NCBI GenBank assembly: GCA_024679065.1
Contig: JAGIQG010000173.1
Span: forward strand, 1-63,168
Direction: 5' to 3'
DNA from: Sphyrna mokarran
Lineage: Eukaryota
DNA length: 63,168 nucleotides
Below, piece by piece: positions 43,091 through 63,168 of the stretch (positions within the stretch are counted from its first letter, which is position 1; each line of letters begins with the position of its first letter). Under the pieces are notes generated by a model that did no database searches, had not been told where the DNA came from, and worked only from the letters and a program-made list of their open reading frames with translations. The position numbers and the translations under genes were made by a program.

Positions 43091-43104
43091 TCGCCCTCTG
43101 GTGG
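43091..43104 (-). promoter_or_regulatory. CTCF-binding motif
   Basis: Reverse complement ccaccagagggcga closely matches the CTCF core; upstream ggcaatttacc resembles the CTCF upstream module. Confidence 0.65.
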
Positions 43105-43973: not shown

Positions 43974-44382
43974 ATGTTCTTCCAATTTTCTTTACTAATA
44001 TTGTTGGTCTTCCTGTCCAGTAAGTTTAAGTTTATATTTTTGCTGTTTGTTCTCAGCGTTCTCCATCAGACATTTAAGAGATTCTGTTATTTGTTGCAGG
44101 AACCAATGGCAAAGATGAAGTGTTCCAAGATCCCCCTGAACTAACGGTTAAAGAAGGACAGACCGTAACATTGTCCTGCAATTACTCGACAGCTGTTATT
44201 CCGACTCTGCTCTGGTACATTCAGTCTCACGGGGAAGCTCCGAATTATTTATTGACAGTAGGCACTAAAGATTCTCCGGATAGATTTTCTGCCGTTTCGC
44301 ACAAAGGAAACAAAACGGTCCTTTTAACTATCGCCGGAACGCTTCTCTCTGACAGCGCCGTGTATTTCTGTGCCATGAAGCC
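43974..44382 (+). CDS. TRAV: TCR alpha/delta-type V segment V1 (leader 43974-44019, V exon 44100-44382)
   Basis: 46-bp leader MFFQFSLLILLVFLS, gtaagt/tgcag phase-1 intron, TLSC..WYIQ..DSAVYFCAMKP; RSS cacactg-24-acaaaaacc at 44383-44422. Confidence 0.9.
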
Positions 44383-44994
44383 CACACTGGTGCAGAGATA
44401 TGGCGAACCCCGGACAAAAACCCCAGTCTGGGAGTTCCAGTTAGTGATCAGCAGAGGGCGCGCCCCACTGATAAACAGAAGCAATTCCTGTGAGAGTTCA
44501 GGCCGTTACTAAAATAACACAACATTCAACATGAAGGGCCGTGCTGTGTTGCTCTTTGCTCTTTGTTCTTTGTTGTTATGAATAGGTGAGCAGCAACAGA
44601 GAAATTGTATTAGGTACGTTGTAACTATCGTGTATAGTACGTGTACGTGTATACTGCAAAATAATTTCGCACATCAATTTATTATGCCCTCACTCACGTT
44701 TTGTATTTTCATGATATTTTCCGGTCTATTTGAATTAATGAGCAAAACATTCTCAATCTCTACTCTCTGAGTCCCATTTATCACAACCGGTGCATAGTTT
44801 CTATATGATTAGAACATGTTGTTTGTTGAGATACAGTTTGTAGAAAACGAATACATTTCCCAATTTGTTGATTACACTCCTTAGTTAAATCGATGATTAT
44901 TTTCCTTTCGACTGAGTGTTTTCTGACAGAATTGACAGCCCCGTGTTTTCGACTTAAAATAACCAGGCTGTAACCATAATCCCAAATGACGAAA

Positions 44995-45720
44995 GGCCGG
45001 GGTAAGGCCTCTCGAGTCTGCTCTCTCATTCAATGGAATCATGGATGTCCCAATATTCCTCACGTAGACTTTACTGCTCTTTCCCCATAACTCTTGATTC
45101 GCTCACTGATCAAAAATCTATTTATCTCATCCTTAAATATAAACAATGACTTTACCTTCACGGTTCTCTGCAACAATGAGTTCCAAAGATTTACAATCCT
45201 CCGTATGAAGAAATTGTTCCTCATCTCAGTTTTCAGTTGGCGCCCATTTGTTCTGAGACTTTGTCCTCTGGTTCTAAACTCTTCCATTAGGGAAAATATC
45301 TTCTCAGCATTTAGCTTGTCAAGTTCCTCAGTAATCCTATATATTTCAGTTAAATCACCTCTCACTCTCTAAATGGCAATGGGTAGAGTGCAATCCTGTT
45401 TAACCTTTTCTCATAAATCAATCCTTCCACAACGGGGATCATCCTCGTTAACTTTCTCTGAGCTACCTCCAATGAAATAATATATCTCCTTAAATAAGAG
45501 GCCCAAAACTGGTTACGGTATTCCACATGTGTTCTCATCAGTATCATGAATGGGCTGTCATATGAGAAGCGGTTTAGTAACTTGGGCTCATACTCGCTGG
45601 AGTACAGAAGAATGAGGGGGATTTGATTGAGGCATATAGAACACTCAATTAGATTGGTAAAGGCAATGTTAACCAAGTGTTCCCCTTTCTAGAACAGCCT
45701 AGGACAAGAGGTCATTGTTG
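44995..45720. mobile_element. CR1 fragments in both orientations
   Basis: RGDLTEIYRI..RIVNLWNSL and LEVAQRKLTRMIP..YEKRLNR motifs (minus); short plus-strand piece about 45550-45720. Confidence 0.7.
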
Positions 45721-46486
45721 TAGATAACGGAATTGTTGGAATCAGTCTTGGTTCCAAAAGTGGAACAGATTTTAATGTTGTATATTGTATTGCTTTTGTC
45801 TGCAGGAGAGAGCAGATGGATTAAGTTCATTATCGGACGCATTTCTTCATTGAGGAATATTTGATTGAAGGAACAAATGCGGAAGCAGAAACATCATTTT
45901 AACACCGATATCAAACTTATTAATATTTTAAAGATATTCTTATATGTTTTCAATGTTGCCAGTACTGTTATGTTACAAATATTCGATAAATGGATCAGTT
46001 CGTGTTCAACAATTTGAAATTATGGAACGTTATTTTAGACTAACATCTTCTTGGCACACCGCAATTGGCCACAGTGGAATAAAACTTCAGCAAGAATGAA
46101 AGAGTAAATGCACTGCAATCGTTGGAAAGTAGAATAAAAGAGAATTGCAAGCTCTCCCGCAATAAAAGACCTATAACCGGAAGAAGGGAACAGCTGTTCT
46201 CATTTGTAATTATTTGGTGAAAGGCAACTTGTCGAGGTCCAAGTGAAGAATTACACCCTGCATTTACCAGCATACACCAGCAGAGAGCAGTGTGAGGGGT
46301 GAGGAATATTTAAGATGAGCGGGTCAGGTGGGTGCTCAGAGGTTGTGTGAGCTGGTGTCAGTGTGGGGGGTTAAAGGAGAACCCGCCTATTGTCAGTTCA
46401 ACCTAAACACTGAACTGAACTGAACCCGAATAAAGTATTTGGCTCCCGGTTAATTCTCATCTTCAGGTTTTGCGCGATAATTGAGA

Positions 46487-46819
46487 ATGTTCTGGATTTG
46501 CATCGACTTTCTCCTATTTTTATCTCTAACCCGTACGGGGGTGACCGGAGAAGCTGAAGTGATGCAATTCCCTCCGCGGATGGTTGTCAGTGAAGCGCGA
46601 AACGTATCCCATAACTGCACCATCTCCATTGCTTTTAGCATCCTGCGTTGGTACAGACAGCTCCCGGATCAGTCACCCCAGCATCTGGTGATGGCCACAA
46701 GAGGAACCGATCAACCCGGGAGGATCACTGCCTCAATCGCTGAAGGCAACAAACTCAGCGTCCTGACTGTGAGAGACGTACAGGTTTCAGACACTGCGAC
46801 CTATCTCTGCGCTGTGAGG
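46487..46819 (+). CDS. TRAV: TCR alpha/delta-type V segment V2, leader and V in one exon
   Basis: MFWICIDFLLFLSLTRTGVTG runs in frame into EAEVMQ..HNC..WYRQ..DTATYLCAVR; consensus RSS cacagtg-23-acaaaaacc at 46820-46858. Confidence 0.85.
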
Positions 46820-47489
46820 CACAGTGTGTTAAACACAGGGAGGTCCCGGACAAAAACCCTGCACTGTCTCCAAAACCCGCTCCACCGTGCCTGGAGCATC
46901 AGCATTTTAAAAAGCGCGGTATTAAATTCCAATGGTAAAGGGAATGAGAGCAAAATATTTCTTAAATTTAAAAAAAATTTAAAAAGGTTAAAATGAAGAG
47001 CGTTGGAAATGTATTCAAAGAAAATGGAAGAGATTGCATGGAAATCAGAATGAGCGAAATTCAAAACGAAAAGGCGCTTTGGTTTATTAATTTATAAAGC
47101 ACAAAATTTAGGAAACAATGCAAAGAGAAGGACAAAGTCAAAACCAGCGAATGTGTTGTGACTTTTTGGCAGGATGAAACACACGGAGCTTATTAACTAA
47201 ACGGTGAGAGATTGCAGAGTTCCTAGATTCAGAGGGATTGCGTGTCCTAGTGTGTGAATCTCAAGTAATCGTACACAGGTACAGAAAGTAATGAGAATAT
47301 TGTTGTCCAGCTCACTTACTGAATGTCTGGTTTGTAACACCAAAGAGACACTTACATTACAAATTCGCCCCTGTACCGTTGAACATAGAACATTACAGCG
47401 CAGTACAGGCCTTTCGGCCCTCGAAGCTGCGACCACCAGTGGAACCAATCTAATGACTGGTGTTGAGGTGTTCTATGAAACCAAAAGAG

Positions 47490-47578
47490 AAAATGCTGGA
47501 AAATCGCAACAGGTCGGGCAGCATCTGTAAGGAGAGAAAAGAGCTGACGTTTCGAGTCCATATGACACTTTGTCAAAG
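47490..47578 (-). mobile_element. Penelope-like terminal remnant with U3-A8 hammerhead variant
   Basis: Minus strand cu-UUGACAA-a-GUGUC(auaug)GACUC-GAAA-CGUC-ag (47544-47578). Confidence 0.55.
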
Positions 47579-47796
47579 GTCCTTCATCAAGTCGCGTTAT
47601 CTCAACCTTGACCCCCTCGCCTGAGATTTGGTGTGATCTTCAAGTTAAATCACCACCAGCCCCTGGACATCTCGGCGATGGTGACTTTACCTTTATTGTT
47701 ACTATCTATCGGTGTGAAAGCGCCCTCTGCTGAGCACTAACTGGAACACTTACTGCGGGGTTTTTGTATGGGACTCGCCGTATCTGTAACACTGTG

Positions 47797-48413
47797 GACT
47801 CCAGGCGCAGAAATAGACCGCACTGTCAGTCATCAGCGTGTTCCCGATCATTAGCTCGGTAATCTTAGCAGTTTTATTAAATGTCGCTGAAAGGCGGTCG
47901 CTGATGTCGGTGTGTTTGAACAGCTTCGCTCCAACAATGTAAAGCATGTACTGTGGAGGCTTCCCGGGACTCTGACTGTACCAGTACACACCAGGGTTAG
48001 AAATGCTTGCCTTCAAGTTGCAGTTTAATGTGACATTACTTCCCTCCTCCACTGTTATTTCAACAACCGGCTTCTCCTGTGTGTCTTGGTGACTCCATTC
48101 TAATATAAAATAATAGAAAAAGTTAAAAAAATCAGTCAGCACCGATTTTAAACAAAATCGTCATTAAAACGATCACTATTATTGGTCAAAAATAACATCT
48201 GGCTTTATAGGAAAGGAAATACATTAACATATCGAAGGTAGGAGCAGGAGGAGGCCATTCGGCATTTGGAGACTGTCCTGCCATTCATGGTGATCATGGT
48301 TGATCACACAACTCGATCCGCTTTGCCCCATATCATTTGATCCCCTTCGCCCCCAAGAGCTACTTACTGAGAAGTGAGATAAAGATGAGAATCGGACTGA
48401 GATAGTTCACCAT
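47797..48413 (-). CDS. TRAV: TCR alpha/delta-type V segment V3 (leader 48413-48368, V exon 48099-47797)
   Basis: Leader MVNYLSPILIFISLL, phase-1 intron, TLNC..YWYSQ..DSAVYFCAWSP; RSS cacagtg-22-acaaaaacc at 47796-47759. Confidence 0.9.
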
Positions 48414-49199
48414 GATGCTTCCTGAGTCTGTAACGCGGCAGTGAGAGAAATCCTCTGTCAGAGACAGAAATACAGATGCCCGTCCCACTGCACTGCTGAT
48501 CCAATCAAGGAGAGGAATGGAGCAGCGACAGCAATCCGTCCAATCACCCAATCGGGACAGAATGAGGGCAGCAAACGGAAGCAGTGGGCGGGGATACGGC
48601 AGACTTATTATTGGATGAAGTTGCGGTGGCTCTTAGCTGCACTCGGAGCTGATGGAGCGGAAATAGTGACGGTTGAATCTACAAAAGTGTCTGACCATCC
48701 TGCACCTGTTCATTGTTCAGGTGTCTAACAATAAGTAGAGCGGCAGGGACACTAAGCAACTAGAATTATAGAATCTCGGAGCGCCAAATGAAGCCATTCC
48801 CTCCTATCTGTGCCTCTTTGAAATAGTTCTCCAAGTCTCCTTTCATCCCTACATTTTTTGCACATACAGGGTTTTTTGTTCAAGATAAATATCATTTCTT
48901 TCTAAATATTTTTGCTTAATATTCTGGGCAATTATAGTCAGTGGGGTTTCCAGCTTTGAAGAACAGGCAGTGCAACAAGTGACCATGATCATTCTATTAC
49001 TGTGTACAGTTTTGGCCTCCTTACTTGAGAAAGGACATACTGACACTGGAGGGAGTGCAGAGCAGATTCACTAAGTTGATTGAAAAGCGGAAAAAAGGGC
49101 TATGGGGATAAGGTAGGGAAGTGGAGTTAGGATGATATGGAGCGAAATTATGAACACTGAGAATGGCGGAGCAGTCTCGAAGGGCTGAATTGATTTGAT

Positions 49200-51380
49200 T
49201 TAAATTATTATTGCAATATGTATTAGTAGACAGTGAAAAGTATTCTTTCCTGTGCGCTGCACAGATAAAGCATACCGTTCATAGGGAAGGAAATGAGAGA
49301 TTGTACACAGAATGTACTGTTACAGCCATAGCTAGGGTGTCGAGAAATATCAACTTAATGCAAGGTAGGTCCATTCAAAAGCCTAATGGCAGCAGGGAAA
49401 ATGCTGTTCTTGAGTCAGTTGGTACGTCACCTCAGACTTTTGTAACTGTTTTTTCGATGGAAGAAGTTGGGAGAGAGAATGTCTTGTGCGTGGGGTCCTT
49501 AGTTATACTGGCTGCTTTACTGAGGCAACGAAAAGTGATAACAGAGTCAATGGATGGGAGGCTGGTTTGCATGATATGTTGGGTTACGGTTAGGCCCTCT
49601 TTCAGTTTCTTGCGGCCTTGGGCAGAGCAGGAGTCATGACCAATCTTTGATGTGGAGATGCCAGTGTTGGACTGGATTAATCTCTGAGTACAACTAGAAA
49701 GAATGCTTTTTATGGTGCATCTGTAAAAGTTGGTGAGATTCGAAGCTGACATCCTTTTCCTGGAATGGACTCAAATAGCACGAGGGGTCACGGGCTTAGG
49801 GTGAGGGGGGTAAGGTATAATTTGGATGCTAGAGGGAGTTTTTTCACACAGAGGGTGGTGGGGGTATGGAATGCGCTGCCAAGTAAAGTTTTGGAGGCAG
49901 GTACTCTGGAGTTATTTAAGAAATACTTAGATGGGCACATGAACAGAATGGGAATGGAGGGGTATAGAAAACTGATTTAAAATAGGGATCATGAGCCTTG
50001 GGAGTCCCTGGGAAGTGTGTAAATAGATGATGATATTGATGTACTTGTTTTTATCCTACAGGTGCTTTGGTCCACCTTGTTGTCTAACGAGGGGCATACA
50101 CGCGATGGGTCGTGAGAGGACTGCTCTTGGATTTTTCGAGAGTATCCTACTGCTTCACGTCGTTAGTGTACGCTTGACCTGGACCATTTGATGGGCAACA
50201 CGACAGCTCAGTGACTATCGCTGTGCTTTGCAGATACATGGATTTGGGCCTGTGTCTGTGGGAGTTTGCGCATTCTCCCCGTGCTTGCGTGGGTTTTCTC
50301 CGGGTGCTCCGGTTTCCTCCCACATCCCAAAGATGTGCTCTTAGGCTAATTGGCAAAACAAATTCTCCCTAAATTGTCTCAAATTTGGTTTTTAATCCAT
50401 AGATCTATAAATATGGACAGGGATCACGGGTAGAGATAGGAACATTGGGGTGGTGGCGTGGGCTCGTTGGGCCGAAGGGCCTGTTTCCCATGCTGTTTTC
50501 TTCTTTGTTCTTTGTCAAATTTACTCAATCTTCTGCGAAAATAATTGATCTTACTTGACTATATTGTCGGCACGGGGCGGGGGAAGGGGGGGGGGCAATG
50601 GCGGGGGTAGGGAGGGGGGTAGGGTAGAACCAGCGCAGATTGTTGGTGATTTGGACAACGGAAAGCCTGAATCTCCCGACCATTTCTACTTCACCCCCAT
50701 TGAAGTAGAGAGGGGCTTGCTCTGTACTATGCTTCCTGACTCCGAATACAATCTCTGTCGTTTTGCTGACATTGAGGGGGAGATTATTGTCACCGCACCA
50801 GTTCACCACATTCTCTATCTCATCCCTGTACTCTGTCTCTTCATTATTTGAGATCTGACCCACTATGCTGGTGTCTCAGCATATTTGAAAATTGCGGGGG
50901 TGAGGGCGGGTGGGGGGGGGGAGGGGAATTTGGCCACACAGTCATAGGTTTGTAAGAAGTATAATAGAGAGTTGAGAACACAACCTTGTGGGGCATCAGT
51001 GTTAAGGAAGAACGTAGAGGAAGTCTGATTCCCTATCTTTACTGATTGTTTTCTGTGGGTTTGAAAGTTCAGGATCCAGCCGCAAAAGGCGGAGCCGAGA
51101 CCCAGGTCACGGTGTTTGGAGATGATTTTCGCAGGAATAGTGGTGTTAAATACCGAGCTATAGTGAATGAATAGGAATCTGTCATAGGTGTTTTGTTATT
51201 TAGATGTTCCAGGCTTGAGGGCAGAGCCAGGGAGATGGCGTCTGCTTGGACCTGTTGTGCCATTCGGCGGACTGTAGTGGACCCAGGCAGTCTGGGAAGC
51301 TGGAATTGATTCGTGCCTTGACTAATCTTTCGAAGCATTTCACAAAAATGGATGTCAGAGCCATCGGGCGATCCCACTGT
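49200..51380 (-). mobile_element. Rex1/Babar-like LINE fragment, interrupted by a CR1 insertion
   Basis: NNEETEYRDEIENVVNWCGDNNLPLNVSKTTE, DAISLAL..LEHL and TNFYRCTIKSILS motifs in decayed frames. Confidence 0.65.
49752..50515 (+). mobile_element. 5'-truncated CR1 with V-SINE domain in 3' UTR
   Basis: TRGHGLRVRG..FFTQRVVGVWNALP..EGY* then UTR with gtttgcgcattctccccgtgcttgcgtgggttttctccgggtgctccggtttcctccca and tail gggccgaagggcctgtttcc. Confidence 0.85.
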
Positions 51381-51389
51381 CCCTAGTCA

Positions 51390-51895
51390 GACTTGGAGTG
51401 CACAGTTCTGGTCGCCTCATTACAAGAAAGATGTGGAAGCTATTGAAAAGGCGCAGAGGAGATTTACAAGGATGTTGTCTGGATTGGGTGGCATGCCTTA
51501 TGAGGATAACTTGAGGGAGCTCGGTCTTTCTTCCCTGGAGAGACGAAGGATGAGAGGTGACTTGATGGAGGTTTATAAGATGTTGAGAGGTATAGATCGG
51601 GTGGATTCTCAGAGGCTATTTCCCAGGGCTGGGGACACAGATTTAAAGTGCTGGGGAATAGGTACAGAGGAGGTGTCGGGGTAAGTTTTCCATTCAGAGG
51701 GTGGTGGGTGAGTGGAATTGGCTGCCGTCGGTAGTGGTGGAGACGAACTCTTTTAAGAGACTTCTGGATGAGTCCATGGAATTTAATGGGATTGAAGGTT
51801 ATAGATAGGCCTAGTAATTAGGGATGTGATCAGCGCAACTTGTGGGCCGAAGGGCCTGTTTGTGCTGTAGTTTTTCTATGTTCTATGTTCTATGA
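51390..51895 (+). mobile_element. CR1 3' fragment with (ttctatg)n tail
   Basis: AQFWSPHYKKDVEAIEKAQRRFTRML..RRMRGDLMEVYKML. Confidence 0.8.
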
Positions 51896-52539
51896 TCGCC
51901 ATTAAGGCACGCTGCTGGCTGTTCTTTGGTATTGTGATGATGGTCGTCTTCTTGAAGTAGATAGAGACCTCAGAATTGTCTACTCTCACTCCTAATTCCT
52001 ATGTTCCCAAAACGGGATGCAATGCCTTATCTTGTCAGCTTGGATATGTTTGCCACTCATGTGCGAACTGTGAAATGAATTCAATTGGATTTTGAATTTC
52101 GTTTATTGAACAAGAAGGAAATGGACGACTTCCCGTTAATAAAACCGTGCTGACTGTTCTTGATTAATCTCTGCCTCTGCAACTGCAGATAACTTCCGTT
52201 TCTCAGAATTGCTTCCAATCTTTTTCTACCACTGATGTCATGCCTGCAGTTTCCTGATTTATCCTTTCCTCTCTTCAGGAATAATGATACCACATTGACT
52301 GTCCTTTAGCCATTATAAACAGACAGGTCATTATAAAATTAGTGATTAATGTGTCATACTGTGCTGTGTGTTGTCTCCAGTACATCATAACCATGACAGT
52401 CAAACACTTCTAGGCATCAAGAAAGTGCTCTGTGATTTATTTTATGTTCATTAAACAACCAGCCAATTCACATCAATAAGTTTTATTCTAAAAATTTAGA
52501 ACAATAAAATTAAGCATACCGGATATCCTGGCAGCTCAA

Positions 52540-53600
52540 ACATAGAAACTAGAAGATAGGAGCAGGATGAGGCCATTTGGCTTTTCAAGCCTGCTGTGCC
52601 ATTCATTAAGATCACGGCTGATCATTTAACTCAATAGTTTAATCCTGTGTTTTCCCCATCACCTTTGACCCCATTCGCCCCAAGTGCTATTTCCAGCCAC
52701 CTCTTAAAAACATTCAATGTTTTGGCATCAATTTTTTCCTATGATAACGAATTTCACAGGCTCACCATTCTTTAGGGGAAGAATTGTCTCCTCATCTCCA
52801 TCCCAAATGGGCAACGCTGAATACTCAAACTGAGGCTTTTGGTTCTAGACCCCTAGACTTCCCCGACACCCTCCCACCATCGGGAATATCCTCTCTGCAT
52901 CTACTCTGTCTATTCCTGTTCGAAATTTTGTAAGTCTCCGTGGGATTTCCTCTCGTTCGTCTTAACTCCAGCGAAAACAATCTTAACCAAGTCAATCTCC
53001 TCAGACATCAGTCCCACCATCTCCGGAATCAGCGTGGCAAACTTTTGCTGCGGTCCCTCGAGAGCAAGAACATCCATCCACAGAAAAGGAGACTAAAACT
53101 GCATACAGTGCTTTAGGTGTAGCCTCACCAAGGCCTTGTATAATTGTAGAAACATATCCCTGCCCCTATACTCGAAACCTCTCGCAAATGAAGACCAACA
53201 TGCTATTTGCCTTCCTTACCGCCTGCTGCACTTGCATGCTTACTTCAGTGACTGATGCACAAGACACCCAGATCCCAATGCACACTCCCCTCTCCCAATT
53301 TACTGCAATTCGGGTTGTAATCTGCCTTCCTGTTTTTGTTTCCAACGTGAATAACTTCACATTTATCCAAATTATACTGTTTATGCAATTGATTAGCATC
53401 CAATCTGTACAGATCATTCTGAAGGATCTCTGCATCCTTGTCGCAGTTCACCTTCTCACCCAACTTGGTACCATCTGCAAACTTTGAGATGTTACATTTT
53501 GTTTCCTCATCCAAATCATTAGTGTATAGAGTTGGGGTCCCAGCATCGGTCCTTGTGGCACCCTACTAGTTACTGCCTACAATTTGAAAAACAATGATCC
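52540..53600 (-). mobile_element. Degenerate CR1 ORF2 3' part
   Basis: ISKFADGTKLG, DKCEVIHVGNKN and QVQQAVRKANSML motifs. Confidence 0.8.
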
Positions 53601-53689
53601 CTATTCGCAATATTTGCCGAGCGCACTGTTATGTTGAGTGAGGCTCTGAGAGTTTTTGTTTAGGTTCAGCCCAGCTCTGTGTCTCTGTG

Positions 53690-55113
53690 GGGCTCAGTGC
53701 GCAGTAATACACCCCGGAGTCTGCCTGCTCCGTTTTAGACACTTTCAACGGGACGGTTCGGGTTGTATCATCGAGCTCCGCTGACAATCGGTCCCCTGGG
53801 AATCTCTCTGCGTTCCCGGTATATTTACTTCTCGTCAGTAGATACTCCATGGATCCGCTGGGATACTGACGGTACGAGAATAGATAATAACCATCAATGC
53901 TTGTAATGGTATAATTACAGAATAACTGAACATCATCTCCTTCACTCACTGTGACTGTAGCCGGTATCTGTGAAACGGAATCTCCTCCACATTGTCCTGT
54001 AAGAGCCAAGAGTAATGAGAAATTAAATGATGTCAGCTCATCTTGTTTAACAGCCGGATACGGCCCGTCACCCTGGCCAATAATTTGAAAAATGAATCAC
54101 AGGATCTAAAAATGAATATATTTCCCGCAACAGGCAGTTTGTAACGGGAACGTGTTATAGAACATAGAACATTACAGCACAGAACAGGCCCTTCGGCCTT
54201 CGATGTTGCGCCGACCAATATAAAAAGCAATGCCCCTCCAAACTAAACCATTCCCTTCTCTTCCATATACTTATCAACTAACCTCTTAAACGCCACCAAA
54301 CTTGGCGCATCTACAACTGCTGCAGGCAGGGCATTCCACTCCTGAACCACCCTTTGGGTAAAGAACCTACCTCTGATATCCGTCCTATAACTATCACCCC
54401 TTAATTTAAAGCTGCGTCCCCTCGTGCTAGCTTACTCCATCCTAGGAAAAAGGCTTCCGTTTGTAGCGGAAATGTGTATTAATTCATGGAACTGACACCA
54501 ATACTGGTGAAAGTGGGAGCTGTACCATTGGGAGTTCTTTCACTGCATGCCTGTGTGAAGTTTGCACGCTCTCCTTGTTGTGTCTACATGTTATGATCCT
54601 AATTGATGTTACTACTGGACAAGTCATATCCCGGGCTGGAATGTGACTCGATAGATCCAAATTTCTGTTTTGTTTAAACATCTTCCAAAGAGATCAGACC
54701 CTCGCCTTCGTCTGACGTTATTTGATGGGGAAACAAAACTGCCTGTGGGTTTAAAGATCTCAGGCTTGACAAAGCTTTTATCCAGATTTCATTGTGTTTG
54801 TCAAAATCTCCCACTGGCTCTAGCGGAGCCTGCAATCCCACATTCAGTCTTCACTCTTATTCACCGAAAGTATTTTGCTTGCTCCCTTGCTGAGACAAGG
54901 TGAATTCTAATTCATATTGGTATATTTTATTTTATATTTTATATATGTATATATAAATAACCAATTTATATATATTTTACCAATTTCTTAATCGAATTGC
55001 TCAACTGAATGCAGTGAATGCTAAATATGTGAAACACAGGGTTTGTAATTTGTGAACCTACCTGTTAATAGAACTCCCGCTGTGAGGAATAAGCACAAAG
55101 TCACAGGAGACAT
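53690..55113 (-). CDS. TRAV: TCR alpha/delta-type V segment V4 (leader 55113-55062, V exon 53996-53690); conserved Trp replaced by Ser
   Basis: Leader MSPVTLCLFLTAGVLLT, gtaggt/tacag intron, LFC..LFSYRQ..DSGVYYCALSP; RSS cacagag-23-acaaaaact at 53689-53651. Confidence 0.85.
54157..54458 (-). mobile_element. Young CR1 3' end inserted in the V4 intron
   Basis: Near-identical to 1171-1320; flanked by imperfect direct repeats gtttgtaacgggaacgtgt / gtttgtagcggaaatgtgt. Confidence 0.75.
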
Positions 55114-56188
55114 GTTTGCAAAGATTTCGAGGCGGATGTGAGCAGAGAGGGTTGAAACCGAAATATTAATCGTCAAGAGCTGGTAAGAAGTTGAGTTCTA
55201 TCTGAACCGTTGTTGATTGGTTCATTGCTGACAGCGTCATTCATTGACATCCAAGCTTAGAGTTCCAATGTCTTGAAATGATCCAATCAGCTTCTTTGGC
55301 TGTCAGGGGTTGGAGAAAGGAAATGAGTGGGTTTGTTTACCACCAGGCGCATTCAAAACGAAGAGAAATTAAACGTATATTCCATACTGAGGAGAATGTA
55401 CGATCAGCAGTTGTTGAAATCAGAAGTGAAACAGGTTGTTTTAAAGTTGTATAGTATAGTGCTTTTTTTCCACCAGGACAGGACAGAAGGACACTGCATT
55501 AAGTTCAGCATTGGCGCGAGTGTCTACACTGGAGAGAACCTGATTGAGGAAGAAATGCATAAAGATAATTTTAACACTGATGAACATATAATTTTTGGAA
55601 TATTTTTATATAAGTTTTCAGTGTTGGTATTCTTGTAGTTATGTAATAAATATTTGATGGATAGACCACTTCCCATTACACAAGTTCTCAAGTTATTGAA
55701 CGATACTTTAGGACTAACATCAGGACCTTCTTGTCACACCCGGACTAGTCACAGTGTGGAATGAAACTTTAGGAAGAACGAGACAGCAAAATGCATTGCA
55801 ATTGTTGGATAGTAGAACAAAAGGAAAATTTTAAGCTCTCCCGCAATAATAGAGCTATAACAAGGAGGAAACAGCTGTTCTTATTTATAACTATCGTATA
55901 AATTGCAACTTGTCGACGAACCAAATCAAGAATTGCACCCTGCAATTACCAGTGCACACCAGCAAAGAGCAAAGTGTGGGTGAGAAATATTTAATCTGGG
56001 CGGGTCAGATGTGTACTCAGAGGCAGTGTGAGCCCGTGTCAGCGTGAAACGCTCAGTATGGGTGGCTAAAGAACAACCCGCCTAATATTGTCAGTTCAAG
56101 CTAAATACAGCACTGAACTGAACCCCAAGAAAATACTTGGCTCCTTGTTAATTTTCATCTGGTTCTCTGTGTTGCATGTGAAATGAGA

Positions 56189-56511
56189 ATGCTCAGGATT
56201 TGCATCGACTTTTTATTGTTTTTCACTCTGACCTGCACGGGGGTGACCGGAGAAGCTGAGTTGCTCCACGGGAGGTTGCCAGTGAGGCGCGAAATGTACT
56301 CATGAACTGCATCACCTCCATTACGTTTGAACTCCTGCGTTGGTACAAACAGCTCACGAATCAGCCGCCCCAGCATCCGGCGATGGCCGCAAGAGGAACC
56401 AATCAACACGAGAGGGTCACTGCTTCGATCGGTGAAGGCAACAAACTCAACTTCCTGACTATGAGAGACGTACAGGTTTCAGACGGTGCCACCTATCTCT
56501 GCGCCATGAGG
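56189..56511 (+). pseudogene. TRAV: TCR V pseudogene V5 (paralog of V2)
   Basis: Same intronless leader (MLRICIDFLLFFTLTCTGVTG); net 10-bp deletion in FR1 shifts the frame; heptamer ttcagtg has lost CAC; spacer 25. Confidence 0.88.
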
Positions 56512-57300
56512 TTCAGTGCAAAAAAAAACACAGGGGGGTCCATACAAAACCCTGCACCGTTTTCAAAACCCGCTCCACAGAAATATTAGCGTTTCAAGAA
56601 GTGCGGTATTAAATTCTAGTGGTAAGAGGAATGAGAGCAAAACATTTCTTGAATGAGAAAGTTCTAAAAAGGTTAAAATGAAGAGAATGGGGAATGTGTT
56701 CGAAAAAAATGGAAGAGATTTCATGCAAATCAGAATGAGTGAAGGACAAAGCGAAAACGTGCAGCGAGAATAGGTACAGAGCACAGACAATTGGGGAACA
56801 ATGCAAAAAGAGGAAGAAAGTCAAAAACAGCGAATGTAATGTGATACATTTTGGCAGGAAGAAACACAAGGAATTTTATTAAGCAAATGATAAGAGATTG
56901 CAAAGGACTTAGATCCAGAGGGCTCTGCGTGTCCTGCTGCATGAATCATAAATGCTCAGATACATGTACAGCAAACCCAGAGAATGGGGGCATTTAAGAG
57001 GTCCGTGGATAGGTTTATGGATGAAAAAGGAATGGTTTAGGTTAGAGGGTCATTGCTTTTTCTTAATTGGTCGGCGCAACATCGCGGGCCGAAGGGCCTG
57101 TTCTCCGCTGTAATGTTCTATGATCTATGTTCTATGTTCTATTGTTGTTTAGCTCAGTTGCTGAATATCTGGTTTGTGATGCAAAGCAGCGCTGATGGCA
57201 CAGTTTCAATACCTGCATCAGCTGAGGTTATTCATGAAGTTGCCGCCATCTCTCCTGAGGTGTGATGTGACCCTCAGGTTAAATCTACTCCAGCCTCTGC

Positions 57301-57425
57301 GGCTGGGGTGAAACCATGATCAAGCGGGTGGTTCGCCCAGGACGAGGCTAACCCATTGCACTTCCGGTGTGCTGACGTCTGCGATGTCTCCAAATGCGGG
57401 ATATTCGACTGCAAAATTTGTGGAG
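57301..57425 (+). pseudogene. RNU1: U1 snRNA-derived copy, truncated at both ends
   Basis: accatgatca..ggtggtt..cccagg.cgaggct..ccattgcact.ccgg.gtgctgac..ctgcgat...ccaaatg.ggga...tcgactgca.aatttgtgg is colinear with U1 stem-loops I-III and the Sm site; the 5' splice-site-pairing end and stem-loop IV are absent. Confidence 0.88.
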
Positions 57426-57529
57426 TTTGTCTTTATTGTCTAACGGCGTGAGCGCGCCCTCTGCTGACACTAACTGGAACTCTTACTCTGGGGTTTTTGT
57501 ATGGGACCTGCTACATCTGTAACAGTGTG

Positions 57530-58139
57530 GGATCTAAGGCACAGAAATACACCGCACTGTCAGTCAACAGCGTGTTGCCGATCATTAGCTGGGTAATCTT
57601 GGTAGTTTTATTTAATGTCGCTGAAAAGCGGTCGCTGATATCGGAATATCTTTGTAGTTTCCCATTCAGAATACGAAGCATGTACTGTGGAGGCTGTCGG
57701 GGACTCTGACTGTACCAGTAGACATACGGGTTGGAATTGCTTGTCTTCAAGATGCAGGTTAATGTGACATTAGTTTCCTCTTCAACTGTTATTTCAGCAA
57801 CCGGCTGCTCCACTGTGTCTTGGTGACTCCATTCTGACATAAAATAAGTATTAAAAATTTTTAAAAAAGTATTTTTCTGAAGAAAATCGCAATTTAAACG
57901 ATCACTAATAAGATACGCCTTTATGGGAAAGGAAATACATGACTATATAGAAGATCGGAGCAGGAAGGGGCCATTCGGCCCTCTGCTCCTGTCCCGCCAT
58001 TCATTGCGATCATGGCTGCCCGTACAACTCAATAACCTGATCCCGATTCCCCCCCCATATCTGTTGATCCCTTTCGCCCCAAGAGCTACTTACTGAGAAG
58101 TGAGATAATGATGAGGATCGGAGTGAAACAGTTCACCAT
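57530..58139 (-). CDS. TRAV: TCR alpha/delta-type V segment V6 (leader 58139-58094, V exon 57833-57530)
   Basis: Leader MVNCFTPILIIISLL, TLTC..YWYSQ..DSAVYFCALDP; RSS cacactg-22-acaaaaacc at 57529-57492. Confidence 0.9.
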
Positions 58140-60159
58140 GATCCTTCCTGAGTCTGCAGCTCTGCAGTGAGAGAAATCCTCTGTCAGAGACAGAAATACA
58201 GATGCCCGTCCCACTGCACTGCTGATCCAACCAATGAGAGGAATGGAGCAGCGACAGCAATCTGTCCAATCACGCAATCGGGTCAGAGTCAGAGTAGCAA
58301 ATGGAAGCTGTGGGCGGAAATAGGCAGACTCAATATTGAGCAAAAGTGTGCGGCGACTCTCAGTTGCAGTCGGGGCGGAAATAGCGATGGTTAAATCTAC
58401 AGAAGTCTCTGACCATTTTGCACCTGCTCAAATCTCTAACAATAAATAGAGCGACTGGGACATGAAGCAACGAAAATTATAGAGTCTTTGAGCGCAGAAT
58501 AAGGCCATTCATTCTATCTATATCTCTTTGGAAGAGTTCTCCAAATCATCATTCATCCCTGCATTTGCCACATTCAGATTCTTTGTTCAGGATACATATA
58601 ATTTCCTTTTAATAATTTATGTTTAATATTCTGCCACCATCTGAAGCAATGTGATTCCAGCTTTGAACAACTGGCAGTGCAACAAGTGAACACGATCATT
58701 CAATGCCTTTTCTTCTCTTACGCTGACATACTTGGATTAGCGAATATTCTACTGATTGAAACAGTTCTGCGTAATCTATTCCATCAATTTAAAAAACCTG
58801 AGTACTAAAATTAAGAAACTCATTTCATTATTTGATAAAAGAAGAGCAAGTCATCTGATCATTGAATGCCGTCATCCGTGGACATTTGCTTTCTCCAATG
58901 TCTTCACCGTCTCACTAAATGGTGATTCCCTGGTTCCTAAATAGTGATAAAACGTAGCTTAAACGTCAAAGAATTTAACTCAGTCCGACCAAATTAAATT
59001 TAGACCTGTCTGAAGATATTCGTGTTTTCGTTTGTAAATGAACGAACCTGAAAACCTCTCAGTGGCCTTCATTGGAAAAAGGATTGAGCAGAGATGAGGA
59101 ATTGCGATGCAGGTGGACTAGACAAACTGCAATTCTTTTTTTCTCTGCAAAGATGAGCTACACTACGGGAAGGACAAAGAGGCACGTTTCAAATACACCA
59201 CAGCCCGAATTGGAATAGGGCTCCTTGTTCTTACAACAACCTGTTCTCTATTCAAACCATTCCCGTGGAGCAGTCTGAGTTGCAGCGGCAAAGCCCTTAT
59301 GTACTTTTATGTTCTTAATTCACCTTTTTTCCATGTTATTATCTGGAGTTAGGGGTAGTAATAGCTAAGGCTTCAATAAATATCCTTAGCAACAGGTACC
59401 GGCTTTCGAACTGAAGCCGAAGTATCTGCCCCAGAGTCACAAACACTATCCATTGTGGCTCAAGGGTTCATCTCTTAATATCTAAGGAGGTATAAGACAG
59501 TCCAAACTGAGGTGCTCAACTTCATATGGTTTTGTTAAAGTAAATCGCATGTGACAGTTTCCTCTGCCAGAACATTGGAAAACACCAGAGTCTACTTTAG
59601 GAGGGGAGAGGGCAATGGAAAGATGAGATTAATTGATTACTCTGCGATTAGTTAAACTTGGAAGGTGGTCATATTTGTCATAGGACCCTTACAGTGCAAA
59701 AGGAGGCCATTCAGCCCATCAAATGTGTACCGACTCTTACCCAGGCCCTATCCCTGCGGTGACTAAAGAGATGGCGGAAGAAGAGGCAATAGTAAGTTTC
59801 AGAAGGGAATGAGAGATAGGTTGAAAGCAGAAAAATGCAGTCACTGTGAGAGATGTGGGGTTTGAAAGATGAATTGAAGAATTCTGTCAATTCTGAATTC
59901 TTCACATCAATTCTGAATTCTGTCAGGCGAAGATACCACGGGCCGAGTGGCCTCATCTCCTGCATTGATACGCTCTGTTTCCATTCTGTTCATGTCCCTG
60001 GCTCTGTTATGTCCCTCCCTTCTCTATCTTTTTCTCAGTCACTTGAACATTGAGCAGGTGCAGAATGGTGACAGATTCCGGAGATTGAAGTCACGCTGTT
60101 TCCGTTCCGGGTGCAGCTGAGGCAGCTGCACACTTCACTCAGTATTTTGTCTACCGCAT

Positions 60160-60329
60160 CCCCGCCCACTTCCGTTTTCTGCGCTCACTCTGAACCTATT
60201 GTGTGATTGGACAGATGACTGCCGCTGCTCCATTCTTCTCATTGGTTGGATCAGCAGCGCAGTGGAACTGTGTATTTCCATCTCTGACAGGATTTCTCTC
60301 ATTACAGAGTTGCAGACTCAGAAAGCATC
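60160..60329 (+). promoter_or_regulatory. V7-family promoter (GC box plus two inverted CCAAT boxes)
   Basis: ccccgcccacttcc, gattgg, cattgg; conserved in inverted form upstream of V3 (48420-48600) and V6 (58140-58320). Confidence 0.6.
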
Positions 60330-60828
60330 ATGGTGAATTATCTCACTCCGATCCTCATCATTATCTCACTTCTCAGTCAGTATTTTCTTCCCAGTAAAAC
60401 TATAAGCTCCTCATGAGTGTCGTAACCCAGATATTTTTTGTTGGTAAAATAATAGTGACAATGATAATTGTATCGTTTAATCTGAGGCTAACTCTGATTG
60501 TCATATTGTTGTTGTTTCTGTTAGAATGGAGCCACCAAGACAAAGTGGAACAACCTTATCCTGTAATAAAGGTTCAAGAAAAAAATGATGTCACACTAAC
60601 CTGTGCTTTGAAGACAAGCGCTCCCAACCCTTATGTGTACTGGTACAGTCAGCAGGCCGGGAAAGCTCCAGTGTACATGTTTCAGCTTATTGGAAAGAAT
60701 GTGCATGGGAATGCCGACCTCAATGATCGGTTTTCTTCCAAATTTGATAAAAAGAACAAGACTAGCGAGCTAACGATCAATAACACAGTGATCTCCGACA
60801 GCGCCGTGTATTTGTGTGCCATGAAGCC
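60330..60828 (+). CDS. TRAV: TCR alpha/delta-type V segment V7 (leader 60330-60375, V exon 60525-60828)
   Basis: Leader MVNYLTPILIIISLL, gtcagt/ttag intron, TLTC..YWYSQ..DSAVYLCAMKP; RSS cacactg-24-acaaaaacc at 60829-60868. Confidence 0.9.
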
Positions 60829-62136
60829 CACACTGCTGCAGAGCTATAGCTAATGTCGTACAAAAACCCTACACTGGCAGTTCCAGTTAGTGCCCAGAAG
60901 GGTGCGCACGCACACACGCGGGTCATTCACTTTCCACAGAGAGAATGACGGAGATTCTTAAAATTGCAACCAAAGATAATTCTCAAAAAAACAGCAACTG
61001 GTATGGTCCTCTTGCAGTTACATTGGTTAATGGTTGGAACTTACATTTGCGATATCGATCTGAGGTACCGCAACATTTTTTTTTCCGTTTTCGATGCCTT
61101 TCTCTATTTACTCCAGAGTGTCCTTGTCTGCAGATTTATGGAAATTGTGTACATTTGCTTTCCCAGTCTTTAACGTAAACATTAAAGCTTTTTCTATTAC
61201 CTTGTACATTAATTCAGAACCTCTCCAATCTGACTGCTCAGCTATTCAGTCCCATTTTCCATTCACATCACTAATAAGGATTTCGCTTTGCATTGAATCA
61301 CACACTAATCCGATACTCTTGGTGCAAGAATCCTTGTCCGCATATGGAATGGACATTCAGTTACCTCTCATATAGAGAGGCAAAGTTATAGAATTTCCAA
61401 TGTGACATTGTTATTGAATTCAACTCCTCGCAGATAAATCCTAGCTGTCACCACACTGCCTATGGTTTTCCTGTGCTGTTCGCACTCTTACCCGTCTCTC
61501 CTGTGCTGTTTTCTTGGATATTTCATTGGAGATATTAATCTTTGTTGCTTTTCCCTGTTTGGTACTGATTGGATTAGCAGTCCAATGGGAGACAAGCTAT
61601 ATTTCTACTCTGAAAGATTTCACAGAGTGCAGAATTGCAAATTGAGAGAACAGCATATGGAAGTATCTTAGATCATTCACTATTCTATCACTTCTTATGA
61701 TGTAGATGTTTTGACTAAAAAAGTCATCCTCCCCTGCACTATAACTGCTATCCAAAAGATGATTAATAACAAACTGATTTTTATGCTGCTGTGAGGATGG
61801 ATATCGTCATTCTCCATGTCAGAACAGAGCCATCAGGCCTCAAGGGACCGGTCGGTTCCTGAAATGATAGTTGAAGAGGAAAGTCTTGCCCTGTTGTGGG
61901 ATGACTAAATTCACTTGTTCTTTTCGTGGGATGAATTGCAGATAAAGGAACTGTGAGGTCATTGGTTGAACGGAAGAACGTGGAAGATTGAAGTCGATTG
62001 AATCTCATCTGATGACGTTTTCAACAGTAAACCAATCAACAGGGAGCCGGATATAACTCAACCTTTTCCCAACTCTTGACCGAAACAAATTCAGCTTCAA
62101 CCCATTCTGGTCAAATCCGCCGCCAGTTCTGCAAAC

Positions 62137-63053: not shown

Positions 63054-63168
63054 CACAGAGACACAGAGCTGGGCTGAACCTGCACAAAAACTGTCAGAGC
63101 CTCGCTCAATGTAACACAATTCTATGACGCACGCTGCGCCTATAACTCTGCAGATGGAAACACCCACT

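What the first reader, a model, noticed from the sequence alone, without database searches (positions are those of the whole stretch)
44383..60907. RSS-linked CTCF cassette at fixed spacing behind four shark TCR V genes
Seen: V1, V3, V6 and V7 each carry gttccagttagtg followed by a CTCF-core-like 14-mer 24-25 bp beyond the RSS nonamer, always co-oriented with the V. The copies are tcagcagagggcgc (44448-44461 +; 47720-47733 -; 57454-57467 -) and ccagaagggtgcgc (60894-60907 +). V1 is from a different V family, and flanks diverge just past the motif. Known: CTCF elements directly downstream of proximal mouse Igh VH RSSs promote RAG-scanning access during cohesin loop extrusion, whereas mammalian Tcra/d V elements lie mostly near promoters. 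Inference: an RSS-CTCF module for loop-extrusion-guided V(D)J recombination exists in a cartilaginous-fish TCR locus, which would suggest deep ancestry or convergence.
Basis: partly seen in the sequence, partly recalled or inferred. Interest (0 to 1): 0.8.

Follow-up and report, generated by a model that had tools for sequence, protein, structure and literature searches.

The report
CTCF-like site behind shark TCR V signals
Four of the eight T-cell-receptor V gene segments in this cartilaginous-fish window carry, at a fixed distance behind their recombination signal, a strongly conserved 27-28-base element that looks like a two-part binding site for the chromatin-looping protein CTCF, an arrangement so far described mainly for mouse antibody heavy-chain V genes.

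Summary
GTTCCAGTTAGTG occurs exactly four times in 63 kb. Each copy starts 11 nt after the nonamer of a V 23-type RSS, on the V strand, and is followed after 0-1 nt by TCAGCAGAGGGCGC (V1, V3, V6) or CCAGAAGGGTGCGC (V7), at the stated coordinates.

Across the four V units the 13-mer is the longest invariant run. It is longer than the nonamer run, while V1 and V3 exons are only 54% identical in DNA and the flanks are unalignable. This indicates selection rather than chance or recent copying, although V3 and V6 are duplicates, so there are three lineages.

The core matches the CTCF consensus at 13 of 14 positions (V7 12 of 14). AGTTCC lies 8-9 nt upstream, where the CTCF upstream motif belongs. 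Read depth shows the cassette is not part of the abundant repeats beside it. A Heterodontus francisci V gene model reads through an RSS into a compatible cassette.

The CTCF reading is well supported by sequence, but occupancy and any role in RAG scanning are untested. The invariant linker, the decayed V7 core, the four cassette-less Vs and the mixed V orientations all count against a simple story. Other first-stage notes of this scan report the same module elsewhere in this genome; I did not check them.

The parts
44078..44380 (+). V1 exon: TCR alpha/delta-type V with an intact reading frame, in a family of its own
   Evidence: tblastn and translation. It is 41-47% aa identical to V3, V6 and V7. 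The nearest named proteins are elasmobranch.
44383..44422 (+). V1 RSS: CACACTG, 24-nt spacer, ACAAAAACC
44434..44461 (+). V1 cassette: 13-mer at 44434-44446, 1 nt, then CTCF-like core TCAGCAGAGGGCGC at 44448-44461
47798..48124 (-). V3 exon, of the V3/V6/V7 family
47759..47796 (-). V3 RSS: CACAGTG, 22-nt spacer, ACAAAAACC
47720..47747 (-). V3 cassette: 13-mer at 47747-47735, 1 nt, core at 47733-47720
57532..57858 (-). V6 exon, a duplicate of V3 (84% nt identity over 300 nt)
   Evidence: D1
57492..57529 (-). V6 RSS: CACACTG, 22-nt spacer, ACAAAAACC
57454..57480 (-). V6 cassette: 13-mer at 57480-57468 directly followed by the core at 57467-57454 (linker 1 nt shorter)
60500..60826 (+). V7 exon, of the V3/V6/V7 family (about 52% aa identity to V3 and V6)
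60829..60868 (+). V7 RSS: CACACTG, 24-nt spacer, ACAAAAACC
60880..60907 (+). V7 cassette: intact 13-mer with a degenerate core CCAGAAGGGTGCGC (12 of 14 to the consensus; T at an otherwise near-invariant G)
46490..46858 (+). V2 exon and RSS with no cassette (comparison)
53651..54018 (-). V4 exon and RSS with no cassette (comparison)
56198..56550 (+). V5: a V2-like pseudogene with a frameshift and a degenerate heptamer, no cassette
62725..63092 (+). V8 exon and RSS with no cassette (comparison)
43091..43104 (-). CTCF-like core CCACCAGAGGGCGA at the outer edge of the V array, divergent with the V1 cassette
47381..47665 (.). very abundant repeat 55 nt beyond the V3 cassette; it bounds the conserved block
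   Evidence: summed depth of 3x10^5 to 1.4x10^6 in its two main bins against about 100 beside them; copies in the window (D11, I13)
44466..44704 (.). abundant repeat starting just after the V1 cassette (start approximate)
   Evidence: bin depth of 5x10^4, but only 196 at 44463-44465 in run X1; contigs join 44573 to 47381

Best explanation
The cassette is a two-part CTCF-binding element: an upstream module (A/T)GTTCC, an 8-9-nt linker and the core TCAGCAGAGGGCGC. It is inherited as part of the 'V exon - 23-RSS - cassette' unit of one clade of TCR alpha/delta-type V segments (V1 plus V3/V6/V7) and is kept by purifying selection. With this polarity, bound CTCF would turn its N-terminal, cohesin-arresting side away from the V and its RSS. 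Cohesin extruding chromatin from the side downstream of the V would then stall right next to the RSS. That would hold the V-RSS at a loop base or recombination centre and raise its chance of being used, as proximal mouse VH CBEs do. Shown here: position, spacing, strand, conservation well above the flanks, the motif match, and that the cassette is not an abundant repeat. Inferred: CTCF binding (about 0.65), and a role in V(D)J recombination rather than mere insulation (about 0.4).
For: There are four exact 13-mers, all 11 nt after a V nonamer and on the V strand. The composite pattern has about 0 matches expected by chance. In the four-way alignment of 710 nt per V unit the 13-mer is the longest invariant run, at 13 nt; the nonamer run is 10. 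Invariant columns by segment: V exon 38%, spacer 38%, 11-nt gap 18%, 13-mer 100%, core 10 of 15, next 50 nt 9%, further out 5-7%. V1 and V3 exons agree at 155 of 289 nt, but their cassettes agree at 27 of 28. The core matches CCASYAGRKGGCRS (a consensus I recalled) at 13 of 14 positions in three copies. The window holds 6 such sites at up to 1 mismatch against 0.59 expected; 3 are cassettes and 1 sits at the edge of the array. The core differs by 1 nt from the 13-nt centre of the validated mouse alpha-globin HS+66 site printed in PMC11417384. The CTCF upstream motif is given as 'CTGCAGTTCC / CAGCTGTTCC', bound by ZF9-11 across a linker of about 8 bp (7-10) (PMC12885311), or as a 9-mer at a 5 or 6 bp spacing (bioRxiv 10.64898/2026.01.05.696797). 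The cassettes have GCAGTTCC (V7), GAGTTCC (V1, V6) or GTGTTCC (V3), 8-9 nt before the core. The two-part motif is conserved down to lamprey (PMC5504073). Skate TAD borders carry oriented CTCF motifs (PMC10115646). The cassette is not repeat-borne: depth at 44463-44465 is 196 in X1, against about 55 for single-copy contigs and 5x10^4 for the adjacent repeat. In run X10, from another coded organism, a 1,232-nt contig aligns from 44067 to 44463 and stops 2 nt past the core, although 94 nt of the contig remain. The read-through tail of Heterodontus francisci protein P0027, TKTHTESSTLCSAEGA, is codon-compatible with ACAAAAAC, 11 nt, GTTCC, 9 nt and TCAGCAGAGGGCGC. Its two inferred changes both fall in the linker. 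Only 2 of 151 proteins are compatible with any cassette pattern, and both matches are in post-RSS tails.
Against: There are no occupancy data; no ChIP or ATAC run appeared among the 24 runs listed. The official PWM (JASPAR MA0139) was not available, so motif strength rests on an IUPAC consensus and on one published site. The linker AGTTAG is invariant in 4 of 4 copies although CTCF ZF8 is said not to read bases, so part of the conservation is unexplained. V7 keeps the 13-mer but has 4 core changes, including a T at a strongly conserved G. The same variant core is compatible with the ENA protein P0016. The Chiloscyllium P0049 tail keeps GTTCCAG but not the core. Together these hint that the 13-mer, not the core, may be the primary constrained part. 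Only the 3' half of the 10-nt upstream consensus is matched. Four of the 8 Vs lack the cassette (3 with intact reading frames, 1 pseudogene). The cassettes face both ways (+, -, -, +), so they cannot all point to one J-C region, unlike Igh and TCR beta. V3 and V6 are duplicates, and V1 and V7 share 84% over their last 116 nt against 59% over the exon, so exchange between Vs has happened and there are at most three independent lineages. CpG retention near the RSS is no higher for Vs with the cassette than for those without.
Confidence: 0.5

Rival explanations
1. The primary functional element is the 13-mer GTTCCAGTTAGTG, bound by another sequence-specific factor. Its complement holds TAACTG, which fits the Myb-type consensus YAACKG as I recall it, next to a GGAA. 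The CTCF-like core would then be secondary or a co-binding partner.
For: The 13-mer is invariant in 4 of 4 copies, including the 5-6 linker positions that CTCF should not read. V7 and the related ENA protein P0016 keep it with a degenerate core. The Chiloscyllium P0049 tail is compatible with GTTCCAG but not with the core.
Against: No tool here scores transcription-factor motifs, and the Myb and ETS resemblance is recalled and short. In Heterodontus P0027 the two inferred changes fall inside the 13-mer's linker while AGTTCC and the core are kept, which is the pattern expected for a two-part CTCF site. Three cores are identical over 14 nt, which a passive neighbour would not be at this divergence.
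Confidence: 0.2
2. The cassette is a real CTCF site, but it works as a local insulator or boundary between V transcription units, or against the neighbouring zinc-finger gene cluster and repeats. It would have no direct role in RAG scanning or V choice.
For: The cassettes face both directions, and V1(+) with V3(-) form a convergent pair 3.3 kb apart. A reverse CTCF-like core at 43091-43104 and the forward V1 cassette form a divergent pair exactly where the array meets a C2H2 zinc-finger gene cluster, the arrangement described at skate boundaries. Sites with the upstream motif are reported to be the strong insulators.
Against: The fixed 11-nt distance to the nonamer and the strict tie to V orientation (4 of 4) suggest coupling to the RSS rather than to the gene's promoter or to domain borders. 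The mouse RSS-linked CBEs do affect V usage.
Confidence: 0.15
3. The cassette has no present function. It is a leftover carried along by V duplication and patchy gene conversion, possibly an ancient repeat fragment.
For: V3 and V6 are copies within a 9.7-kb duplication. V1 and V7 share an unusually similar 116-nt 3' end (D5). The homology of the V4/V8 pair also ends about 23 nt after the nonamer without any cassette, so short post-RSS homology tracts are common here.
Against: The 11-nt gap and the RSS spacer between the nonamer and the cassette are diverged: 4 of 11 and 15 of 22 nt agree for V1 against V3, while the cassette agrees at 27 of 28. Conversion would have to hit the same 28 nt repeatedly. 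V3 and V6 are 84-86% identical around the cassette but 27 of 27 within it. Depth shows it is not an abundant repeat. It recurs in a V of a named shark at 57-61% aa identity.
Confidence: 0.07

Closest known systems
RSS-associated CTCF-binding elements of D-proximal mouse Igh VH segments (for example the VH81X and VH2-2 CBEs; families 7183, Q52, S107 and others)
   Same: A CTCF-type motif lies directly 3' of the V RSS, within 100 bp. It is specific to certain V families, co-oriented with the V, and absent from at least some pseudogenes (passages read in PMC5859386, PMC7930373 and bioRxiv 10.1101/2020.01.01.891473).
   Different: This is a TCR alpha/delta-type V array of a cartilaginous fish, not Igh. 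Vs and cassettes lie in both chromosomal orientations. There is an invariant 13-mer and a fixed 11-nt distance to the nonamer. Binding and effect are untested here, whereas they have been shown by mutation in the mouse.
Two-part CTCF sites, core plus upstream (U / M2 / motif-2) module read by ZF9-11, such as the IL3 insulator sites and alpha-globin HS-38 and HS+66
   Same: The core is preceded by ...GTTCC at a linker of about 8 bp, with two spacing classes differing by 1 nt. The cassettes have linkers of 8 nt (V6) or 9 nt (V1, V3, V7).
   Different: Only the 3' 5-8 of the 10 upstream positions match. The linker is invariant here, although it is described as not base-specific.
CTCF sites of the mouse Tcra-Tcrd V region
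   Same: Same kind of locus. Most sites point toward J-C, but both orientations occur (129 of 144 toward J-C).
   Different: The mouse sites are described as mostly upstream of V promoters or intergenic, not RSS-linked.
Mouse Igk V-region CTCF sites
   Same: A V array with deletional and inversional Vs and with CTCF sites in both orientations.
   Different: In Igk no correlation is reported between CTCF orientation and V orientation. Here orientation is tied to the V in 4 of 4 cases.
V8E, a conserved downstream element of PAIR-associated mouse VH8 genes
   Same: A family-specific conserved sequence downstream of V segments, proposed to regulate recombination (abstract only, PMC10390877).
   Different: It is described as a putative enhancer-type element, not a CTCF motif at fixed RSS spacing. 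I did not read its text.

Membership tests
RSS-proximal V-segment CTCF-binding element (mouse Igh type) | CTCF core motif | tested here: met
   13 of 14 positions match the recalled consensus CCASYAGRKGGCRS in V1, V3 and V6, and 12 of 14 in V7. There is 1 nt difference from the centre of the published HS+66 site. The JASPAR PWM was not available.
RSS-proximal V-segment CTCF-binding element (mouse Igh type) | Lies within about 100 bp 3' of a V RSS | tested here: met
   The core starts 24-25 nt after the nonamer in 4 of 4 copies.
RSS-proximal V-segment CTCF-binding element (mouse Igh type) | Motif points toward the D-J-C end (convergent with downstream anchors) | tested here: inconclusive
   It is co-oriented with the V in 4 of 4 copies. 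However, the Vs lie on both strands (+, -, -, +) and no J or C segment is in the window, so at most half can point to any one J-C region.
RSS-proximal V-segment CTCF-binding element (mouse Igh type) | CTCF and cohesin occupancy in lymphocyte precursors | not testable with these tools
   The 24 runs listed had no library description, and none was identifiable as ChIP or ATAC.
RSS-proximal V-segment CTCF-binding element (mouse Igh type) | Promotes use of the linked V; absent from non-recombining pseudogenes | tested here: inconclusive
   All 4 cassette-bearing Vs have intact exons and the one clear pseudogene (V5) lacks the cassette, but 3 intact Vs (V2, V4, V8) lack it too. There are no usage data.
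Two-part CTCF site (core plus upstream motif) | Upstream motif resembling CTGCAGTTCC / CAGCTGTTCC | tested here: inconclusive
   GTTCC is invariant. Counting back from the 3' end, 8 of 10 positions match in V7 and 6-7 of 10 in V1, V3 and V6, by eye against the consensus quoted.
Two-part CTCF site (core plus upstream motif) | Linker of about 8 bp (7-10), with two spacing classes 1 nt apart | tested here: met
   There are 9, 9, 8 and 9 nt between TTCC and the 14-mer core. By my reading of the sequence printed, HS+66 has 8.
Repeat-borne CTCF site (SINE B2-like expansion) | The motif is part of an abundant dispersed repeat | tested here: not met
   There is no copy outside V flanks in 63 kb. Depth across the end of the cassette is about 3-4 times single-copy, while the adjacent repeats reach 10^4 to 10^6.

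The most novel reading that the evidence does not exclude
An oriented CTCF site welded to the V 23-RSS is an ancestral part of the jawed-vertebrate TCR alpha/delta V unit and is not a mouse Igh peculiarity. On this reading it survives in sharks as this cassette. It also survives, in diverged form, in teleosts and a lizard, whose V gene models read through the RSS into peptides compatible with a forward CTCF core (7 forward against 0 reverse hits in post-RSS tails). Loop-extrusion-guided presentation of V RSSs to RAG would then predate the split of cartilaginous and bony vertebrates, and mammalian Tcra would have secondarily moved its sites to promoters.
Probability: 0.2. Interest if true: 0.8.

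Novelty: new member of a known kind. Interest (0 to 1): 0.55.

Why it matters
RSS-linked CTCF elements are the best-understood cis-elements by which cohesin loop extrusion presents V segments to RAG, but they are known from mouse Igh, with only two cases reported in Tcrb. A conserved, oriented, RSS-welded CTCF-type cassette in a cartilaginous-fish TCR V array would show that this wiring exists at the base of the jawed vertebrates and in a T-cell receptor locus. It also supplies defined 28-nt targets for CUT&RUN, Hi-C and repertoire studies in shark thymus. Because Vs with and without the cassette sit side by side, and in both orientations, the array is a natural experiment on whether such sites promote deletional and inversional joining alike. 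My three literature searches combining CTCF with shark or cartilaginous-fish antigen-receptor terms found no description of it. That covers only the open-access library searched, and supplements were closed.

Tried and rejected
**Chance.** Rejected by the shuffles.

**Abundant-repeat origin.** Rejected by depth and by the absence of copies away from Vs.

**Recent copying only.** Rejected for V1 against V3, V6 and V7 by the diverged spacer and gap, but accepted for V3 and V6.

**CpG retention as a proxy for germline protection.** There are 2-4 CpG in the 60 nt after the nonamer for the four Vs with the cassette and 3-4 for the three without it that I checked. The mean for 60-nt windows is 1.65. 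The test is uninformative.

**RNA gene.** Rfam found only a U1-like hit beside V6, and there are no tRNAs.

**DNA from other species.**
- The word-index protein search gave 1 hit, no candidate (V1 exon plus read-through tail, residues 85-124) and 2 hits among 14 candidates.
- An exact scan of JGI metagenome contigs for the cassette gave 0 hits.

As a substitute I read the post-RSS tails of gene models among the 151 proteins held. This is protein-level inference only.

**Sequencing runs.** No run was identifiable as ChIP, ATAC or RNA. All four laid runs are contigs, so there is no level, strand or end information. The 'other letters' table showed 40 of 994 rows, none inside a cassette, which proves nothing.

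**PWM scoring.** I did not build one from sequences printed in papers.

**Locus context.** The position of J and C, and hence deletional against inversional status, is not in the window.

**Earlier notes of the scan.** They gave titles only and are unchecked. A search by sequence was blank.

**Supplements.** Supplements of PMC5859386 (site lists) and PMC12885311 (conservation tables) were not seen and may bear on spacing and orientation.

Full report
**What is in the window**

Translated searches with the window's own V exons find eight V-like exons, all between 44 and 63 kb:
- V1, 44078-44380 (+)
- V2, 46490-46819 (+)
- V3, 48124-47798 (-)
- V4, 54018-53692 (-)
- V5, 56198-56511 (+), with a frameshift and a degenerate heptamer
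- V6, 57858-57532 (-)
- V7, 60500-60826 (+)
- V8, 62725-63051 (+)

There is also one 28-aa fragment at 61801-61884. The first 44 kb hold C2H2 zinc-finger ORFs and retroelement ORFs.

A profile of V1, V3, V6 and V7 found 3,862 proteins at E <= 0.001. Of the 20 hits whose names I looked up, the chondrichthyan ones (Heterodontus francisci, Scyliorhinus torazame 'T cell receptor alpha chain ... like', Leucoraja, Mobula, Chiloscyllium, Callorhinchus) include the best BLASTP matches of V1, V3, V6 and V7, at about 50-70% identity. An unnamed ENA protein reaches 81% to V7. 'Cartilaginous-fish TCR alpha/delta-type V array' is therefore supported. I did not try to determine the organism.

The families are {V3, V6, V7}, V1 alone (41-47% aa identity to the former), {V4, V8} and {V2, V5}.

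**The observation**

Each copy sits on the strand of a V and 11 nt after the nonamer ACAAAAACC of that V's 22- or 24-nt-spacer RSS. The core therefore starts 24-25 nt after the nonamer. The composite patterns have essentially no chance expectation. V2, V4, V5 and V8 have nothing similar.

**Is it more conserved than its surroundings?**

Yes. In a MAFFT alignment running from 310 nt before to 400 nt after the heptamer of the four V units, the 13-mer is the longest invariant run (13 nt). The nonamer plus one base gives 10, and a WY codon block gives 8. The fraction of invariant columns is:

| Segment | Invariant columns |
|---|---|
| V exon | 38% |
| Heptamer | 6 of 7 |
| Spacer | 38% |
| Nonamer | 9 of 9 |
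| 11-nt gap | 18% |
| 13-mer | 13 of 13 |
| Core (plus the optional base) | 10 of 15 |
| Next 50 nt | 9% |
| Further out | 5-7% |

V1 and V3 share 155 of 289 exon positions but 27 of 28 cassette positions.

There are caveats. V2+V3 and V5+V6 are the two copies of a ~9.7-kb duplication with 78-90% identity in blocks, so V3 and V6 are one lineage. Even so, their cassettes are 27 of 27 against 84-86% around them. V1 and V7 share 84% over their last 116 nt against 59% over the exon, so some exchange of 3' ends between families is likely.

**Why the homology stops**

Laying contigs of four public runs on 44000-48200 shows very abundant repeats right next to two cassettes.
- One starts just after 44465. 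Depth is 196 at 44463-44465 in run X1, where single-copy contigs have about 55, while the bin mean is about 5x10^4.
- One lies at 47381-47665, with depth up to 1.4x10^6.
- Contigs join 44573 to 47381, so these are pieces of one element family.
- Behind V6, a U1-like sequence (Rfam 71.7 bits, threshold 69.5) ends 10 nt from the core.

The sharp boundary therefore reflects independent insertions that spared the RSS-cassette block. The cassette itself is not part of an abundant repeat.

The V4/V8 pair also loses homology about 23 nt after the nonamer without having any cassette. A sharp boundary alone would therefore prove little. The cross-family invariance is the real evidence.

**Is it a CTCF site?**

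Three cores match the consensus CCASYAGRKGGCRS, which I recalled from memory, at 13 of 14 positions. V7 matches at 12 of 14, with T at a G that is normally strongly conserved. At up to 1 mismatch the window has 6 sites against 0.59 expected: three are cassettes, one is at 43091-43104(-) at the outer edge of the array, and one is 200 nt upstream of V2. The core differs at one position from the centre of the validated alpha-globin HS+66 site printed in PMC11417384.

Upstream of the core the copies read GAGTTCC, GTGTTCC, GAGTTCC and GCAGTTCC. Then follow 9, 9, 8 and 9 nt before the 14-mer. The passages I read describe the following:
- an upstream CTCF motif 'resembling CAGCTGTTCC' or 'CTGCAGTTCC-like', read by ZF9-11 across a linker of about 8 bp (7-10) that ZF8 bridges without base contacts (PMC12885311);
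- a 9-mer at a spacing of 5 or 6 bp from the core motif as that paper delimits it (bioRxiv 10.64898/2026.01.05.696797);
- conservation of the two-part motif from human to lamprey (PMC5504073);
- oriented CTCF motifs at TAD borders in the little skate (PMC10115646).

The cassette thus fits a two-part CTCF site in its 3' upstream half, its spacing and its core.

What does not fit is the invariance of the linker AGTTAG, and the fact that V7 has an untouched 13-mer with a decayed core. The related ENA protein P0016 has a tail that is codon-compatible with V7's whole cassette.

**Evidence from elsewhere**

Two indirect lines exist.

(a) In run X10, which carries a different coded organism label from the main holder X1, three contigs are informative:
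- A 1,232-nt contig aligns over 44067-44463 (V1 exon, RSS and cassette; 70 other letters and 10 gaps) and stops 2 nt after the core, although 94 nt of contig remain.
- A 246-nt contig aligns over 44397-44530 and on to 44698.
- A 301-nt contig covers 47710-47977.

I could not see the letters inside the cassette.

(b) Many public V gene models read through the RSS. The tail of Heterodontus francisci XP_067869992.1 (P0027, 57-61% aa identity to V3 and V6) is TKTHTESSTLCSAEGA. It is codon-compatible with ACAAAAAC, 11 nt, GTTCC, 9 nt and TCAGCAGAGGGCGC. The two residues that differ from the window's translation both lie in the linker. Of 151 proteins, only P0027 and P0016 are compatible with any cassette pattern, and both matches are in the post-RSS tail. 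Whether P0027 is an ortholog in another species or a paralog in the window's own species I cannot say.

Other first-stage notes of this scan report the same RSS-plus-CTCF module on at least six other pieces of this genome. Those notes are unchecked.

**How it most likely works**

By the passage, the N-terminal (ZF3) side of CTCF lies downstream of the CCACCAG... strand. In the cassette that side faces away from the V and its RSS. Cohesin arriving from downstream of the V would be arrested next to the RSS.

That is the geometry inferred for mouse VH CBEs. These point toward D-J-C, sit just 3' of the RSS, and promote use of their V during RAG scanning. That 'pointing toward D-J-C' means 'motif on the V coding strand' is my inference.

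Here, however, the cassettes point +, -, -, +. No J or C segment is in view, so at most half can face one recombination centre. Either the inverted Vs use another mode (short-range diffusion or inversional joining), or the sites mainly insulate neighbouring units. The V1 cassette and the reverse site at 43091 form a divergent pair at the border with the zinc-finger cluster.

I put CTCF binding at about 0.65 and a recombination role at about 0.4.

**Comparison and novelty**

The closest known system is the RSS-linked, family-specific CBE of mouse Igh. TCR beta has two such sites near an RSS. Mouse TCR alpha/delta sites are described as mostly promoter-proximal.

Three searches combining CTCF with shark, skate or cartilaginous-fish terms and antigen-receptor terms found no report of such an element. 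This covers an open-access library only.

I therefore class it as a new member of a known kind, predicted from sequence.

**A wider lead**

Among 79 read-through tails with a nonamer-compatible peptide, 5 are compatible with an exact forward 12-mer CTCF core and 0 with the reverse complement. Counting all tails by eye, there are 7 forward hits in 6 proteins:
- Poecilia P0001
- Danionella P0004
- the flatfishes P0081 and P0135
- the unnamed P0133
- the lizard Phrynocephalus P0025, whose tail FLPQTQQRA fits TTCC, 10 nt and YCAGCAGAGGGC

The other 6 forward hits and all 7 reverse hits lie in coding parts. These hits are from related genes and are protein-level inferences only, so they are a lead and not a finding.

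Noticed in passing
window 57291-57443 (+): There is a U1 spliceosomal RNA match (Rfam RF00003, 71.7 bits against a threshold of 69.5, full model length). It ends 10 nt from the V6 cassette and is absent from the duplicated V3 copy. It is probably a U1 gene or pseudogene inserted after the duplication.
   Followed up: partly
window 46136-48997 and 55820-58704: A segmental duplication of about 9.7 kb carries a convergent V pair (V2+ / V3-), copied as V5+ / V6-. Blocks are 78-90% identical. The stretch between the two convergent RSSs has been remodelled independently in each copy, by a repeat in one and a U1-like sequence in the other. V4(-) and V8(+) form an 87% inverted repeat.
   Followed up: partly
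window 47381-47665; about 44466-44704; also 54160-54217 and 57049-57125: An extremely abundant dispersed repeat is present, with summed contig depth up to 1.4x10^6 in three runs of different coded organisms. Contigs joining 44573 to 47381 show that the two stretches belong to one element family. It was not classified.
   Followed up: partly
window 43091-43104 (-), also 42065-42078 (-): CTCF-like cores (CCACCAGAGGGCGA with 1 mismatch, and CCACAGGAGGGCGC with 2) lie on the minus strand at the outer edge of the V array, next to the zinc-finger gene cluster. The first forms a divergent pair with the V1 cassette. Another first-stage note proposes an orphan 12-RSS beside it; I did not test that.
   Followed up: partly
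proteins P0001, P0004, P0025, P0081, P0133, P0135 (public V gene models; no locus): Read-through tails of teleost and lizard TCR-alpha-like V gene models are compatible with a forward CTCF core shortly after the RSS nonamer. There are 7 forward and 0 reverse hits in tails. This suggests RSS-linked CTCF motifs may be widespread in non-mammalian TCR V genes.
   Followed up: partly
window 1-40000: A cluster of at least eight long C2H2 zinc-finger ORFs lies on both strands (for example 6289-7452, 11124-12089, 16012-16743, 26420-27643 and 38144-39451), interspersed with retroelement ORFs (29487-30389 and 13246-13908). It directly abuts the V array.
   Followed up: no
window 46277-46290 (+): A CTCF-like core, CCAGCAGAGAGCAG (1 mismatch), lies about 200 nt upstream of the V2 exon and is co-oriented with it. 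No match within 2 mismatches was listed in the duplicated V5 copy.
   Followed up: no
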